NCBI RefSeq assembly: GCF_032062105.1
Contig: NW_026917960.1
Location: forward strand, 1-64,000
DNA: 64,000 nt
Source of the DNA: Saccostrea cucullata
Taxonomy: Eukaryota
Direction of reading: 5' to 3'
Both the position numbers and the translations under genes were made by a program. The notes under the pieces are model-generated. The model had not been told where the DNA came from, searched no databases, and was given only the letters and a program-made list of their open reading frames with translations. Within the stretch, counting starts at the first letter, position 1, and each line of letters starts with the position of its first letter. Positions 30,452-38,746 of the stretch are shown in pieces.

Positions 30452-33400
30452 CTACTTTTTCTTGAAATGTCGCTGGATCTCTAACCTTTTAGTTTTCATC
30501 TTCTCTCTGTAGGTGGCAATCAGTATGTCCATAATTTTATTCTAAAGAGAAAAAGAAAAAATAATTGATTTCTGTCCCTTTGTTTTTTTTTTTCTTTGAA
30601 ATATTGAATATTTTCCTCCTGGAAAAGAGTTAAATACTGGACCGGGGGCCATAAAACTTAGACGAGCTCACCTTTGATCTTAGTCTCACTTTCCCACTAT
30701 ATATTCTTTTGGTAAAAGTCAGACTGAGATCAAAAGTGAGCTCGTCTAAGTTTTATGGCCCCAGGCCTGGCTCCGGGGCCATAAAACCTAGCCAGCTAAC
30801 TTTTGAGCTCAATCTAAAAATCTCGGTTTCCGGGCTTAACTTAGACTGTCTCACTTTTAGTGTGCCATAAAGGGAGACTGAGCTCATTTTAAATTTTCTA
30901 ACTTGAGACAGAAAGTGAGACCAAAACTGAACAGGATATCAAAGGCATTGTGGGATATTGTTTACATGTGACAGTGCCACGCCCACTAGGTATTGCGCAA
31001 TCATTTTGAAAAATTAAAGTACTGTCAAAATTTTCTTTGTTTTGTTGTTTTCTTTTCATAAAAATTTGATTGTTACGTCATATTGACCATTCTGACGTAA
31101 TTTACGTTACCCCTCAGCGTCCGCCAGCGTCCGTTTTGACAAAAACGTAAACATGGCAGAGGAGGACATTGCTTATTTGATTACAAAAAACAATGAGAGT
31201 AATAATGAGCCCTTTTGGAGTAAATTGGAAAAAGAGATATTGATTGAGGAAGCTTCGAAGCGGAGCGATGTTTTAGACGGAAAATTCAAAGGGGCACAGT
31301 CCGGAAAGGCGGAGAAAAACAGAGTCTGGGAAGAAATAACCGCTGCGGTGAACGCGTAAGTTCATAAGTGATTTTCACATTTATAACAGATAGACCTACA
31401 TAAAAAGAAGGGGAAAAAGCAAGAAAGAAATGCATGAACATAATTTTATTCCCAAAGGCAGTTGATTATCGTAATAATATATTGTACTGTCCATGAAAAT
31501 AATAAGCTCGTTCATTTAAAAAAAGAAATTGCGAATAAGAACTTTTTTTCTGTTTTGCATCTTTCTTTCCTTATTTTTTAAGTTTTGCATATCATATTTC
31601 TATTTTTTAGAATTTCCTCTAAAAGAATCTTATTAAATATGTATTTAAAAGTACATGTGGATTATGGAGATTAAACAACTTAATTGTGAAATCATGTGCT
31701 ATAAATTTACGCTGAATAGTGAATAAAGCAAATCGCCAAAAACAAAACAGAAGAAACAAAGTGCTTTTGCAAATACTCATGTCGCATGAAATTTCTGAAG
31801 CAAATTTAACTACATAGGTCTCTTTCATAAATTCGCTAGGCTTAGACTAGCGATAAATCTCGAGCAACCTTCAAAATGACACAGCTATCGGTTTTTCCCA
31901 AATCCAAAAATAGTTGTTTTGTTTATAGATTACGTCACACGTATCCAAGTCGGTGTCTTGTTTATTCGCTTCCCTTACATTTTGGTACAAATGACTTTTA
32001 ATTCCTAGACTAACAGGATCGTCTTACAAACGAAATTTTGATTAAGACCCAAATGTTATACATGTACCGGTAAATAACAGTCCTAGACTATATATTATTA
32101 TAAAATGGTTTAATTTATTTTTTTAATTTAACAAGGTGTTTTTGTACAAGCCATTTGAAACAGAAACACAAATTTTGCAAGATTTTGATCCAAATTTTAA
32201 GAATTACTACTTCAATTAAAAAGGAAAATAATGACAGAGAAATTTATTATGAATTATCATGATTATAAATAAAGAAAAATACTTGTGTTAGGTATTTCTA
32301 TTTTAAATTAAAAAAAAAAATCCTTAATTTCATTCTGTTTATCCAATTTTCATATTTATTTTTACTCAGAATTTCCACAAAGATTTTTAAGCAGAAAGTA
32401 TGCATATTTAAATATATATATATATACATATATCAATTATTTATTGAAAATTAATCTTTCTAGCAAGGGAGTCTTTAAAAAGAGGACAGTGAAACAGACC
32501 AAGAAACAATGGTCAAATTTGAAGCAGAGAGGTAATTAAGATAAAAAAAAAATATTTAAAGATATTTAACGCAGGTTTAAGATTTATTCCTAGTACTACT
32601 TCATTCATTCAAGAATGCTTGTTGGTATTCGTGGAAATTGTTTTTGAAATCAATTTGTTTAATATCCTATTACACATGTATATGTTCATATAATTAATTA
32701 TAATTAATAATTAACATACATCTCTATACATGTCATACATCTATTCATAAAATTCAATTTTGATAACACAATCTTTAAAATATTTTTATCAATTTATGAT
32801 ATAATTTTGAACAGCAAAGAAAATAAACAGTACCAGCAAGTACCCTGCAACAGGAGGAGGACCGAAGCCCCCCTCACCCTCCCCTATGGACGAAGCTGTC
32901 CTGTCCATCCTCTCAGGGAGACCCTCATTAGAGGGTATAGAGGGTGGATTCGACACATCAGCCACTGACACAGGTATAAAAAATATTTCAAGAGGCATTT
33001 AGTATCTCTAAAAATTTAATGTAAAATAAGCTCTAAAATAGTCAGTTAATGTCTGAATGAATGTAATTTATTAACATGAATGAAATAAACATTTTGTTTC
33101 ATTTAAGTGGAGCAGCCAGTTCTTGAGAAAGAACCAGGACCAGTTCTGCAGATGGAACCAGGGCCATCAAAGTCTGTCTCTTCAACACCAGTGACTGCAG
33201 TGGCTGCAACAGGGATGGGGAAAAGGAGAAGAACAACAGACACCCTCCATCTTGAAGTCCTTGAGGCCGAAAAAGACAAACTAAAATTAGAGATGGAGTT
33301 CATTAAGTTAAAAATGCAGAAAGTTTCCTCAGAAATAGAGTTAATAGAATTAAAGAAGAACACTCTCAAATCATGTAATTTCTCCTTACCCTCCTTATCG

Positions 33401-36400
33401 CAGTTTTCTGAATTTTAGTCTCAAGATTTCTACAGACAGATTAACAAATAAAGATATGACCAATCCAAAGAAGAGAGGAGGGTTATACTGTTTTACATTT
33501 GTGTGTCTGTATGTGTCTTAAGCTATACATGTATATTAGTCTGTATGTAATTTTTTTTGTCCCAGTATTCTTAGCAACTTCTTTAGTGCATGATGTTTGA
33601 AATGTTAGCCAAACTTTGTCAGGAGTCAAGCCATATGGTGAAATTCATTTTTATTTCAATCCAGTTTAATTTCTGGTTCATCCCTGTGTCTGTCTGCAAC
33701 CAAACTTGTGTTTATTCATATCAGAGTGTACATAGTGACAAAGACATCTTCTTATAATTACAATATCATTATCCCCACTGCAAATGAATTAGGGTATTGG
33801 GGTGCGGGAGGGGGAGGAGTACTTAGAATCACCATGTCTGTCTGTCCAAGCGATTTTCTAATGAACCTTACATGACTTGTTTGACTTACATAGCCTTACC
33901 TTAAGAAAGACTTTTTCATGCATAATTATCAAATTTTACAAAATGCACATTTTAAACAAACAAATTCAAAGAATTGTGGTCCCCCGCTTTTGGTATCTTT
34001 GTTGGCGAGATGTCATTTTTTATAACATATTGTGTCAAATATGAATGACCAATCATATATCTTTAAGAAATAGTATCACTGAAGTTGATTTTTTTTAAAA
34101 ATAAGGCCATTCATTAAGGTCAAGGGGTCAGAAACCATAGCATGCTCTGAAATATCTTGTCACAGGTAATGCATATCTCTCCTCAGTAAAAAAAACTATA
34201 GGGAACAAGATGAGTTTGTGAAACACTGATGCCTCTGTATTGCAACATAGCAAAGATTAAACTTTTCTTTAATGGAAATTGATTATATTGGTACACAAAG
34301 TAGGTTTTTCTCAGAAGAAATACAATTGTGAAATATAAAAGCCCTAGCTAGTACCATCTGTTCAAAACTTATGGCCAAGGTTTCAAGTTCTTTCATATTT
34401 TTGGTAAAGGAATCTCCAAGGTCAAGGTCAAAGTTGTTGGTATCCTATATAATGTCTTGCCACAAAGAATACATAATTTATATGAAATATGAAAGTTATA
34501 TTGTACACTGTATCGGACCGTTCAAAAGTTATGGCAATAAGTAAAAGTTTGTAATTTTTGTGTAAAAGTTGTGGGTCAAACTCCAAGGTCAAAGTCAAAT
34601 TTGGAGGTACCAAAGGAAAGTCTTGCTACAAGGAATACTCATGTAAAATATGAAAGTCACAGATCCACTAAATCAAAAGTAATGGGAAATGTTAAAGGTC
34701 ATCCCCTGGTTTCAACTCCAAATCTAGCTTTTTATATGTTATTATTTGTGGGTATACATATCCATCCATAGTATTTAAGAGGAAATTCTTATCAATATTC
34801 ATACTTAAACTGTGATTGTACATGTATATGCAGTGTAAATGTGAATGTTTTACTGCAACCAAACTTTGATGCCTGTATCAGTGTATATTACAATGTAAAT
34901 GTATATCTTTTGCCATAAAGTTGGCTATTTCTGTATAAATAGATGTCTGTACTATTTATGATCCAGAAAAAATATAAACACCTTGAAACTGAATCAGATG
35001 CTTCTGTTTTGTATTTATTTAGATCTCAGTCCTATTGATCGTCTCCAGTAAAAGAGTCTACATACGTTCAGCTCTTTTCTCCAAAAAGGGAGGAGTTCAT
35101 ACATTTTGGTTGTGGTTCTCATATTAATCATCAAACAATACAGTGACACATGACAATAGTCAAACTTTAAGTGAAATTTTGCTGTTTTTTGGAATTCATA
35201 TTCACTGCAAGTAGTACATTATTATCAGGATTAATCAAATAGTAACAAATCATGGTTACCTAAAAATAATTCTGGGCAATGTGATCTCGCACTGTCTTGC
35301 CATCTCCACCCATGGCACCAGGATCCACCCAATCCTCTTCCTCTTCTATCAAAGGGGTCTGAATGATGTCCCCCCGTATAATTCCAATGTTGTGCAAGAC
35401 ACAACAGGCAACAACTGCCACACATGCCCTCTCTGGTGTTAATCGCAGTTCAGTGTGTAAGCATGAAAATCGACGTTTTAAAATGCCGAATGTCTGTTCA
35501 ATCAGAACACGAGTTCTGCAATGTGCATTGTTGTATCGCTGCATGAAATCTGCTGCAGGGTTTAGGTATGGGGTCATCAGATAGGTCTTCAAGGCATATC
35601 CTGAATCTCCCAAAAGAAGACCTTGAATATGTCCTCAAACAAAAACAAAAAAAGATTAGTAATAAAGTGCATGTATATCATATAATCCCTATTAACCACC
35701 CCTGCCCCTATAAGTGCCCCTTAGGTCTTTTTCAATTGTCAAGAAATAAGGGCCCCCTTGCACAGTGATTAAAACTATTTAGATTCATATCAAAAATTTA
35801 AAGAAAGTGAAAATTAAACTTGTCTATTATCCAATTTCTCGGTGGAAAATCAATAATTTAGCATAATTTGGATGAATTATTTCACATAAAGTACAGTAGT
35901 TATATATTATTTTAGTGGTTCCTTTTATTTATTTTTTTTTTCAAAAGATTTTTTGAAGTTTAAATATGACAAAAACATTAAATATTATAAATTGTCTAAG
36001 CGCCCGGGGCGGTTAATAGGGATTATACGGTAATTTTATAAATGACATATATTTTCTGAATTTCTTTATACATAATGCCTAGGAAAAGGCTAATGACCTT
36101 GACCTGACTTTGTTCCTAAAATAGAATACATGGTCAAATTGAATCTCATTGATACCATCACTTAGAGACATTGTCTTCTTGAATTTTTGAAAATTTCTGT
36201 GAATTTCTAAAGCTCCCACCCATTTCAGTATATGGATTAATTTACTTATCTGACTAGCAATGTTTGAATATACTTTTTTCATAAGAAATAGATAAAAACT
36301 GCACAAGAATACTCAGAATTCCCAGTTTTATAATATTTTGTGTTTATTTTGTTCAGTGTGTTCAAGGTTTGAAAATTTTCTCAGCAACAACAGCATGCAG

Positions 36401-38746
36401 CTGACTGAGTGTTACTTCTTTAACATGCTGAAAATTTGCTCATTTATCATGTTTAAGAAAAAATATTCTAAAATCAAGCAATTTTGAATTGTTATCATTC
36501 GATTTAGTTTAACCAATAGAATGTGCTTGACATGGTGGATGGACAAATAAGAATAAACAACATGATAATAATTAATTCATGTCTTACCATTCTCAAACTC
36601 TCTGCAAATAGCAGACTCTCTAAAGATTCTAGAGTCATGAACAGACCCTGGCCATTTGGCTACAACATTGGTTATTAGGAACTTTGGTCCACATATCATC
36701 TGAAATGAAATAATCAGCCTGTTAATAAGTTAATCATTAATTCATAGGCGTCGGAGGGGGGGGGGGAGAGGGGCTTCGAAGTACAATATTTATCTCGTCC
36801 TTGGGGCGTGCGTGGTTAATATTGTATTCCTCAGGTAGTTAAATCATTGTATTGACAAAAGAAGAAAAAAAACCAGCAATTATAATTGTGTAATTTAATT
36901 ATTTACATGGTTTGCTCAGTATAAAATATATTAACTTTTGTTTAATTCTTTTTTTAAAATATCAAAATTGTGAAAAAAGATGGGTAGGGCAATTAGTACA
37001 CATCTGTTTGTACACATATATTGTATAACCATAAAAACACATAGCTAGTATTAGACTTTTTCATTAAAAAAGAAAATTTGACTATCAAATATTGATTTTG
37101 TAGATTATGAATAATTACACAAACTTTCCAATCATTGCAAATTAAAAAAAATTGTTTATCAATACAGTAGCAAAGAAATAGGTGAATGGCATAGGTCCTA
37201 ATGTTATTTTCCGAATTACCTGAACATTTAGAGAATGGAAACCTTTTCTGTTGACGAAGTCTCCTTCATTCTCACTGGGTGCCTTGATTTTAATCTGCGT
37301 TCCATCAACACAACCAACAACATTTGGAAATCCTTCAAAACATTTAACTTAAATAAAACAAATACTTAAATCTCACATTTCCCCCGCATTTTTCCCTTTC
37401 TCACTCTTTTTTTTTCCAAACACGGTCACTGACACAATATCATTTTGTTTGTAAACAAAGGGGAAGTAAATCGTGAATATTTACGTTTACAAAACTGCTT
37501 ATAGATGCCGTATCACTTATATATAGAACAAGACAAATTTGAACCTTGTCATTGAGAGAATCAGATATATATTGAATGAAAACATACATTTTTCAACTTG
37601 GAAGACTTTATGGACTTCAGTCTGTACATTGATAAATCTACATTATTCAGCAGAGAACATATGAACGAATTACCCCGTAACCGTATAGGGACCTATACAA
37701 AGTGAAAGTAGAAAAGTTCCGAAACCAACCTGCTATATCGAAGAATCTTTTCTTGAAAGTTGAGGTATCTGCAGGGAAACTAATGTATGTACCGGTCATG
37801 TCCGCCAACAAGCGACACACATACCGAACAGCGCGTCCAGTCGTTGACTTGGCAATGCCCAAGGATTCTCCCACAAGGATGTAAAACGAACCCGTGGCAA
37901 GGAACCTCAGAGCTGCAAGAACCTGTAATAAGGGGGGTAACGCCACATTCCTCTCTGTTGGATGGTTGAGGTCATTGAATAACAAGCCGACAAGGAATAG
38001 AATGGTCGCTGGTCGAAAGCGAAAGCGAGAAAAAACCTCCTCCTCATCCATGTCCTCCAAAGGGTTCGACCGATCTCGAAAAACTCGTGGTTTAGGTGCC
38101 TTCCTCCTTCGCTGTATGATGTTGAAAATATTCAATCTCGCTGCCGAAGACGCCATATTGGAAGTGAGACCAAAAATTATGAAGTTAGACACCTTTTATG
38201 TGGTCTAACTTTTTGAGCTCAAAAGTGAGACCAAACCAAGAAAGTGAGACTGAGACCGAGACGGCAAATTTTTATGGCACACCTAACGTGAGACTGAGAC
38301 CAAAAACCTAGACCGTCTCGAATTTTGAGCTCAAAAGTGAGCTGGCTAAGTTTTATGGCCCCGGAGCCTGATCTATGGATTCTGAAGTACTAACTATAGT
38401 ACTGAACCATTGACTTACAATTGTGTTTTCCATGCTCTTTTGATGAAGGTCTGATATTTCTGAAACTGTCCAAGATGCAATAGATTTCTTGCCAATCGGT
38501 AGGAAAGGACATTTTGGTGAATGGCTCTCATGTTCAGCCCTAAATAGTAAAGAATGAGTTTAAATTACTTTCAAACACTTCAAATCACTAGATGGAAATT
38601 GTCAATGCCTGAATGGACAACTATTTTTTGGATGTCAAGGTAATTCAATTCAACATGCTATGTTCAAATCAGATGTCAACTATTCAAGAAGTTTTCAAAG
38701 TTATAAGGAAATTTTGAAATTTTAAGCAACTTAGATAAGAATTTGG

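What the first reader, a model, noticed from the sequence alone, without database searches (positions are those of the whole stretch)
30770..38367. Intact two-gene Harbinger transposon inside the last intron of survivin
Seen: removing the insertions leaves an intron of about 146 bp; with them it is about 7.9 kb. Both transposon genes have intact spliced frames, the DDE triad is present and the TIRs are nearly perfect. The transposase is on the same strand as BIRC5 and its ATG lies about 260 bp downstream of BIRC5 exon 3. The BIRC5 exon-3 donor is phase 0, as is the acceptor of transposase exon 3 (36699), so an in-frame BIR-transposase chimera is possible, as is premature polyadenylation that removes the survivin C-terminal helix. 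Known: survivin is expressed in dividing cells. Inference: the element may gain expression in proliferating or germline cells and is a candidate active Harbinger.
Basis: partly seen in the sequence, partly recalled or inferred. Interest (0 to 1): 0.8.

Follow-up and report, generated by a model that had tools for sequence, protein, structure and literature searches.

The report
Intact Harbinger transposon inside oyster survivin
A complete, apparently young two-gene cut-and-paste transposon of an already described group sits in the last intron of an oyster's survivin gene in some individuals; it is a good natural candidate for an activity test, but nothing found here shows that it alters survivin.

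Summary
Observation confirmed. A 7,598-bp element (30770-38367) with 43-bp TIRs (41/43) and a CTG target duplication encodes an intact 341-aa DDE transposase and a 246-aa Myb/SANT protein, tail to tail. It sits in intron 3 of the assembly's only survivin (BIRC5) gene. The genome is very likely Saccostrea cucullata. CWG duplications place it in the NuwaI group of Harbinger elements (with Harbinger3_DR and oyster Harbinger-2/4/5/8_CGi). A 76%-identical sister family with the same introns is young in Pacific oysters, with one copy in a BCAS2 intron. A DNA run of another oyster shows the empty-site pattern yet holds the element at about 98%. A third sample shows transposase introns 2 and 3 spliced; intron 1 was seen only unspliced. 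In this assembly it is the only intact copy found of its subfamily. The proposed BIR-transposase chimera is in frame but lacks residues 1-180, including catalytic D152; no chimeric joint was seen, and no known carrier's RNA was testable. The scan noted other intact Harbingers in this genome. Verdict: new member of a known kind, potentially autonomous; effect on survivin unproven.

The parts
30770..38367 (.). Full-length NuwaI-type (CWG) PIF/Harbinger transposon, 7,598 bp
   Evidence: TIRs, TSD, two intact genes
30770..30812 (+). Left TIR (43 bp, Myb-gene side)
38325..38367 (-). Right TIR (43 bp, transposase side); subterminal GTCTCAC-type repeats follow (candidate Myb-binding sites, inferred)
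30767..30769 (+). CTG target duplication shared by the MITE and the element
38368..38370 (+). CTG target duplication, right side; the empty-type contig of run X1 joins here
37730..38156 (-). Transposase exon 1 (ATG at 38156; residues 1-142)
37220..37332 (-). Transposase exon 2 (first catalytic Asp, D152); AAG acceptor
36588..36699 (-). Transposase exon 3 (D202); phase-0 acceptor at 36699
   Evidence: spliced form inferred in run X4
35260..35633 (-). Transposase exon 4 (D227, E263, stop); GAG acceptor
   Evidence: spliced form inferred in run X4
35014..35019 (-). AATAAA, first candidate polyadenylation signal after the transposase stop (also the possible premature poly(A) site for BIRC5 transcripts)
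   Evidence: use not tested
31153..31355 (+). Myb/SANT gene exon 1
   Evidence: PF13873, E 1.3e-9
32464..32531 (+). Myb/SANT gene exon 2
32815..32973 (+). Myb/SANT gene exon 3
33108..33418 (+). Myb/SANT gene exon 4 with stop
33965..34700 (.). High-copy repeat nested in the intergenic spacer of the element; absent from the older decayed relative L084; also present in copies in runs X1 and X4
35676..36032 (.). High-copy MITE-like repeat with 34-bp inverted ends nested in transposase intron 3
   Evidence: (I5)
30640..30766 (.). 127-bp palindromic MITE with related TIRs, abutting the element; CTG at 30637-30639; abundant family (1,431 candidates, best copies 92-95%)
   Evidence: (I1)
40821..40934 (-). 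BIRC5/survivin coding exon 1
39914..40023 (-). BIRC5 exon 2 (BIR core)
38419..38539 (-). BIRC5 exon 3; phase-0 donor at 38419
30452..30541 (-). BIRC5 exon 4 (last 29 aa, distal C-terminal helix) with the strongest acceptor of the intron
   Evidence: 86% identical to the last exon of orthologue contigs
37922..37922 (-). Cryptic in-frame acceptor candidate inside transposase exon 1; a BIRC5 exon 3 splice here would give 378 aa with all four acidic residues
   Evidence: sequence only, no transcript evidence

Best explanation
This is a young, potentially autonomous Harbinger transposon of the CWG-targeting (NuwaI) group that inserted into a preferred CWG site in intron 3 of survivin, next to a MITE of the same family, and segregates as an insertion polymorphism. 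Shown: the anatomy, the CWG duplication, an empty-type allele in another oyster, and transposase RNA with introns 2 and 3 spliced in a related sample. Inferred from Harbinger3_DR and Ping/Pong: the Myb protein binds the element ends and brings the DDE transposase into the nucleus and to the ends; the transposase cuts the element out, usually precisely, and inserts it at another CWG; the same proteins mobilise the MITEs and deletion derivatives that share these TIRs. Inferred for the host: most survivin transcripts still splice exon 3 to exon 4 across the enlarged 7.9-kb intron, so the insertion is tolerated. Any exon 3-transposase fusion or early polyadenylation is a minor by-product, though BIRC5 read-through may add to transposase RNA in dividing cells.
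For: Intact spliced frames whose junctions match sister-family mRNAs. CWG next to 38 of 46 distinct TIR ends, and matching CWG pairs at all five other paired elements checked. Run X1: an 803-nt contig aligns to the right flank starting exactly at 38368 after 395 unlaid letters; simulation shows this is the pattern of an allele with neither element nor MITE. The same run holds the element at 1.7% divergence against 5.3% for the flank (Fisher p about 1e-4, small sample), so the family is younger than these flank alleles. Run X4 (about 1.2% from the window): contigs clipped at 37220 and 35632, the exact leftmost placements of the spliced joints. Magallana sister copies are 96-99% identical at different loci, one in a BCAS2 intron on the same strand. 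Orthologous BIRC5 intron 3 in three other oyster contigs is 546-554 nt with no element, and exon 4 is conserved. The exon-4 acceptor is the strongest in the intron. Mechanism: PMC2836001, PMC9392472 (citing Sinzelle 2008).
Against: No near-identical full copy in this assembly: the nearest transposase exon 4 is 72% identical, the nearest Myb-region DNA 70-86%, and the sister copies examined carry stops or frameshifts. So recent proliferation from this copy is not shown. Intron 1 was seen only unspliced in X4 and X9, and the element has AAG and GAG acceptors where relatives have CAG/TAG. The empty allele and the splices are read from clip positions, not from displayed joined letters. Species of runs A, B and C are coded, so the empty allele may come from a sister species. 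No RNA of a carrier individual was available.
Confidence: 0.72

Rival explanations
1. Young but effectively dead copy: the frames are open only because the insertion is recent. Intron-1 retention (a 169-aa truncated product) or private substitutions leave no working transposase, and the family is maintained by other copies in the population.
For: Intron 1 seen only unspliced in X4 and X9 contigs; weak GTTGGT donor and AAG acceptor; V110 differs from the Ala in X1 and relatives; no daughter copies in the assembly. About 1% divergence over 1.8 kb of coding sequence can leave both frames open without selection (inference).
Against: All four acidic residues and the conserved motifs are intact; the GAG acceptor of exon 4 is used in X4; the tables list only a small part of the contigs, so a spliced intron 1 could be unlisted; retained intron 1 may be regulation or pre-mRNA.
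Confidence: 0.17
2. The insertion substantially rewires survivin in carriers: splicing of exon 3 into the transposase (36699, or the cryptic site 37922) or polyadenylation at the transposase signal yields a BIR-transposase fusion or a survivin lacking its distal helix, with a phenotype or a new function.
For: Same strand, phase-0 match, open 276-aa frame ending at the transposase stop; exon 3 to exon 4 splicing of the transposase is used in X4; insertion into a last intron is the known route to host-transposase fusions such as KRABINER (bioRxiv 10.1101/2020.05.07.082677); a sister mRNA starts outside its TIR.
Against: The fusion lacks D152 and the N-terminal region; its acceptor is weak against the native one; loss of the distal helix, which joins the chromosomal passenger complex (own knowledge), should be harmful; the insertion looks polymorphic and recent; no chimeric joint is listed (truncated list). 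Read-through of the intron stops in the TIR after 21 codons, upstream of further introns, a likely decay target (inference).
Confidence: 0.08
3. Domesticated, fixed gene pair (HARBI1/NAIF1-like) kept by selection inside BIRC5.
For: Single intact copy of its subfamily among broken relatives; transcribed in a related sample.
Against: Near-perfect TIRs and TSD; empty-type allele in X1; absent from orthologous introns in other oysters; the element is closer to the X1 copy than the flank is.
Confidence: 0.02
4. Assembly artefact placing the element inside BIRC5.
For: Fragmented assembly (23,869 contigs); no read across the junctions could be displayed.
Against: Exact CTG duplication on both sides, and the two flanks rejoin to a plausible 146-nt intron with a family-type target site.
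Confidence: 0.01

Closest known systems
NuwaI group of the PHIS (PIF/Harbinger) superfamily (Han et al. 2015, PMC4482050), incl. Crassostrea gigas NuwaI-1 to -4 = Repbase Harbinger-2/4/5/8_CGi
   Same: CWG target duplication, DDE_Tnp_4 transposase of about 341-342 aa, second gene with Myb_DNA-bind_5, TIR within 12-61 bp, oyster host.
Magallana gigas/angulata sister family (RefSeq 'putative nuclease HARBI1' XP_052719057, XP_065935198, XP_052690710; loci L087, L091-L093)
   Same: 76% amino-acid identity; same three transposase intron positions; same tail-to-tail Myb gene (249 aa); related TIR; CWG flanks; intronic same-strand copy in a host gene (BCAS2).
   Different: Synonymous sites saturated, so a separate old lineage; several 96-99% identical copies and fully spliced mRNAs are on record there.
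Harbinger3_DR (= NuwaI-2_DRer), reconstructed and shown mobile in human cells
   Same: Same group, two-protein system, CWG duplication; source of the mechanism inferred here (PMC2836001, PMC9392472).
   Different: That element was rebuilt from a consensus, whereas this one is a natural intact copy. The extended 15-bp target preference is not evident here beyond a weak bias at -4 to -7. No direct sequence comparison was made.
Host-transposase fusion genes (KRABINER, SETMAR, CSB-PGBD3; Cosby et al., bioRxiv 10.1101/2020.05.07.082677)
   Same: Same starting geometry: a DNA transposon in the last intron, same strand, with a ready splice acceptor.
   Different: Those are fixed, transcribed, selected fusions that mostly capture a DNA-binding domain. 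Here no fusion transcript is known, the site looks polymorphic, and the DNA-binding Myb gene is on the opposite strand.

Membership tests
PIF/Harbinger (PHIS) | DDE transposase of the IS5/Harbinger type | tested here: met
   PF13359 on exons 2, 3, 4; D152, D202, D227, E263
PIF/Harbinger (PHIS) | Second gene encoding a Myb/SANT protein | tested here: met
   PF13873 E 1.3e-9; 246-aa spliced frame
PIF/Harbinger (PHIS) | TIRs and a 3-bp target duplication | tested here: met
   43-bp TIR 41/43; CTG on both sides
PIF/Harbinger in the strict sense of Han et al. | TWA target duplication | tested here: not met
   CWG at 38 of 46 ends, TWA at none
NuwaI | CWG target duplication | tested here: met
   definition in PMC4482050
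NuwaI | TIR 12-61 bp; two ORFs (DDE and Myb/SANT) | tested here: met
NuwaI | TIR usually begins GGG (typical, not strict) | tested here: not met
   Begins GCT; the Magallana sister begins GCC. The paper says 'usually' and defines groups by TSD, so this does not exclude membership.
NuwaI | Transposase falls in the Nuwa clade of a DDE tree | not tested
   No reference NuwaI sequences were available as tool output
Active autonomous element | Fully spliced transposase and Myb mRNA | tested here: inconclusive
   Introns 2 and 3 spliced in X4; intron 1 only unspliced; Myb splicing not seen
Active autonomous element | Insertion polymorphism or near-identical copies elsewhere | tested here: inconclusive
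   Empty-type allele and 98% copy in run X1 (species coded); no near-identical full copy in the assembly
Active autonomous element | Excision and reinsertion by its own proteins | not testable with these tools
   needs a cell assay
Host-transposase fusion gene | Chimeric transcript joining host exons to the transposase | tested here: inconclusive
   None listed; list truncated; no RNA from a known carrier
Host-transposase fusion gene | Fixed at an orthologous site across species, under purifying selection | tested here: not met
   Absent from orthologous introns L085, L086, L094 and from the X1 allele
Survivin/BIRC5 | Single BIR domain of survivin type plus C-terminal helix, four coding exons | tested here: met
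   Survivin chains E 1e-17, other IAPs above 1e-4; 144 aa; single match in the assembly

The most novel reading that the evidence does not exclude
A segregating allele caught at the first step of transposase capture: in carriers the survivin promoter drives a real share of transcripts through the element, giving cell-cycle-coupled transposase expression in dividing and germline cells, or a stable BIR-DDE fusion (via 36699, or via the cryptic acceptor 37922 that keeps all catalytic residues) at the cost of full-length survivin.
Probability: 0.08. Interest if true: 0.65.

Novelty: new member of a known kind. Interest (0 to 1): 0.3.

Why it matters
As it stands, it offers a natural, intact, intron-containing animal Harbinger of the CWG group with its own MITE family and an insertion that can be genotyped. 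That makes it a usable candidate for a transposition assay without reconstruction, and for a tool or marker in oysters. It also gives a clean natural test of how an essential gene tolerates a same-strand 7.6-kb insertion in a 146-nt intron. If carriers made a survivin-transposase fusion or expressed transposase from the survivin promoter, it would be a rare view of transposase capture before fixation. Intact Harbingers in oyster genomes and in host introns are not rare, so without that result it is an ordinary annotation.

Tried and rejected
1) Looking for a second haplotype of BIRC5 in the assembly: flanks and exon 2 match only the window. 2) Word search for close protein relatives: best 73% identity; none of the exon-level frames is in the collection; the length filter hides full-length proteins, so this says nothing on absence. 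3) dN/dS against the Magallana transposase: synonymous sites saturated (pS 0.77, pN 0.14), which shows long purifying selection on the lineage but cannot date this copy; the run against sister L080 had mis-cut exons and was discarded. 4) Recent horizontal transfer from Magallana: rejected, since the transposase is more diverged at synonymous sites than BIRC5 (pS 0.58). Transfer or introgression among the closer oysters is not excluded (element 1.7% against flank 5.3% in X1). 5) A link to Harbinger-Snek: that paper does not mention oysters. 6) Sinzelle 2008 is not held; cited through PMC2836001 and PMC9392472. The costly representative search and structure prediction were not needed.
Full report
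The observation. The element spans 30770-38367, with 43-bp terminal inverted repeats that differ at two positions and CTG directly outside both ends (30767-30769, 38368-38370). On the minus strand four exons splice to an uninterrupted 341-aa transposase; exons 2-4 each hit Pfam DDE_Tnp_4, and the acidic residues D152, D202, D227 and E263 are present. On the plus strand four exons give a 246-aa protein with a Myb_DNA-bind_5 domain. The host gene is survivin: exon 2 matches survivin chains at E 1e-17 and other IAPs only above 1e-4, the four exons give 144 aa, and it is the only match in the assembly. Intron 3 is 7,877 nt and falls to 146 nt without the element and the adjacent 127-bp MITE. The last exon is confirmed by three orthologous oyster contigs, in which an intron of 546-554 nt without any such element precedes an 86%-identical exon 4.

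The organism. A RefSeq protein of Saccostrea cucullata matches this assembly at 100% over its length at a contig end, so the genome is very likely S. cucullata (inference).

The family. The first 18 nt of the TIR occur 49 times in the assembly against 0 for the control. Of 46 distinct ends, 38 abut CAG or CTG and none TWA; five other paired elements have matching CWG duplications. CWG duplication with a DDE gene and a Myb/SANT gene defines the NuwaI group of Han et al. (PMC4482050), which includes HARBINGER3_DR and four C. gigas families. A sister family in Magallana gigas and M. angulata is 76% identical in protein, has the same intron positions, gene layout and CWG flanks, and its copies at different loci are 96-99% identical. 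Spliced mRNA contigs of that family reproduce my three transposase junctions. One of its copies lies on the same strand inside an intron of BCAS2, so an intact intronic copy is not peculiar to survivin. Earlier notes of this scan list several other apparently intact Harbingers in this genome (unchecked, though one search shows many open exon-4 frames).

Copy number and age. In this assembly the element is the only intact copy found of its subfamily. The nearest transposase exon 4 is 72% identical, the Myb region has only 70-86% relatives with all candidates scored, and the full-length sister copies examined carry stops or frameshifts. Partial derivatives reach 92-96% at the ends, and the MITE family is large (1,431 candidates, 92-95%). 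The element carries two nested repeats (about 33965-34700 and 35676-36032); contigs in other samples cross the borders of these repeats, so they belong to the family and did not arrive after this insertion.

Other individuals. One search and one laying of reads were allowed (stretch 32790-38740). In DNA run X1 an 803-nt contig aligns to the right flank from exactly 38368, after 395 letters that do not lie on the element. A simulated empty allele aligns from exactly that base, while a MITE-only allele would align about 40 nt further. X1 therefore most likely carries an allele with neither insertion, yet it holds the element across most of its length at 1.7% divergence, against 5.3% for the flank. 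The element is thus younger than these flank alleles and sits elsewhere or on the other haplotype. Run X4 (about 1.2% from the window) has contigs clipped at 37220 and 35632, the exact leftmost placements of spliced introns 2 and 3, so the transposase gene is transcribed and spliced there. Intron 1 appears only unspliced in X4 and in RNA run X9 (about 4% divergent); its donor (GTTGGT) and acceptor (AAG) are weaker than in relatives. These readings come from clip positions in truncated tables, species names are coded, and contigs show presence only.

How it most likely works. By analogy with Harbinger3_DR and Ping/Pong (PMC2836001, PMC9392472), both proteins are needed: the Myb protein binds the ends and brings the transposase to the nucleus, excision is usually precise, and MITEs with the same ends are moved in trans. 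The CTG-MITE-CTG-element-CTG arrangement is two insertions at one CWG site; a strict pattern finds one other such abutting pair in the genome. For the host, the native exon-4 acceptor is the most pyrimidine-rich in the whole intron (19 of 20), while the transposase exon-3 acceptor has 12 of 20, so normal survivin splicing is expected to dominate (inference).

The chimera. Joining BIRC5 exon 3 to 36699 gives an open 276-aa frame, but it keeps only transposase residues 181-341. It lacks D152 and the N-terminal region, which in Harbinger3_DR binds the Myb partner (PMC9392472), so it would be catalytically dead (inference). A cryptic in-frame acceptor at 37922 would keep all four acidic residues (378 aa) but has no transcript support. 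Unspliced read-through stops inside the TIR after 21 codons. No BIRC5-transposase joint is among those listed, but only 15 of 335 joints were shown and no RNA of a known carrier was at hand, so the question is open. Last-intron insertions are the known route to host-transposase fusions (bioRxiv 10.1101/2020.05.07.082677), but those are fixed and selected, which this one does not appear to be.

Verdict. A real, intact, probably young and polymorphic NuwaI-type Harbinger in the survivin intron: a new member of a known kind and a good candidate for an activity assay. Its effect on survivin is unproven and probably small. Interest 0.3; the novel reading has probability about 0.08. Remote searches were run exon by exon by reference; the joined search was left out.

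Noticed in passing
window:30637-30790: MITE and full element share one CTG: two insertions at one target. One other abutting pair with a shared CWG was found at G000:C4462:57397-57433.
   Followed up: yes
window:37333-37729: Transposase intron 1 was seen only unspliced in two RNA-like runs while introns 2 and 3 were spliced in one; retention gives a 169-aa product. Could be regulated splicing that limits transposase, as for the P element (analogy only).
   Followed up: partly
window:38750-39800: Four to five copies of a 166-bp oyster satellite-like unit with flanking arms inside BIRC5 intron 2, probably a Helentron-borne repeat; it likely explains much of the word share of the organism-B runs.
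   Followed up: no
window:40040-40790: Three small palindromic or MITE-like inverted repeats (40072-40135, 40528-40645, 40700-40771) in BIRC5 intron 1; all three survivin introns carry repeats.
   Followed up: no
L087:6792-11802 (Magallana angulata CM046781.1): Sister Harbinger copy with an intact transposase and an internal deletion of about 850 bp on the Myb side, inside an intron of BCAS2 on the same strand.
   Followed up: partly
L089:1-70: Spliced sister-family transposase mRNA contig that starts 65 nt outside the TIR, in another repeat with a TATA-like motif.
   Followed up: partly
L066 / L078 (G000:C13203:21003-22033, C23477:20231-21261): 1,031-bp deletion derivative whose left 235 bp is 94% identical to this element while its right 640 bp is only 77%: a mosaic of two subfamilies.
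   Followed up: no
run X3, laid at window:38153-38305: In organism B the transposase-side end is 99% identical at about 6 times the depth of the survivin-exon contig, while parts of the interior are missing: young non-autonomous derivatives there (contig depth is a rough guide only).
   Followed up: no
   Followed up: no
window:14972-16195 and 43905-47318: Long single-exon frames: a leucine-rich-repeat protein (minus strand) and a multi-C2H2 zinc-finger protein (plus strand, divergent from BIRC5).
   Followed up: partly
L091:3362-5774: A YqaJ/alkaline-exonuclease gene (ISL2EU-like second gene) lies next to the M. gigas Harbinger copy.
   Followed up: no
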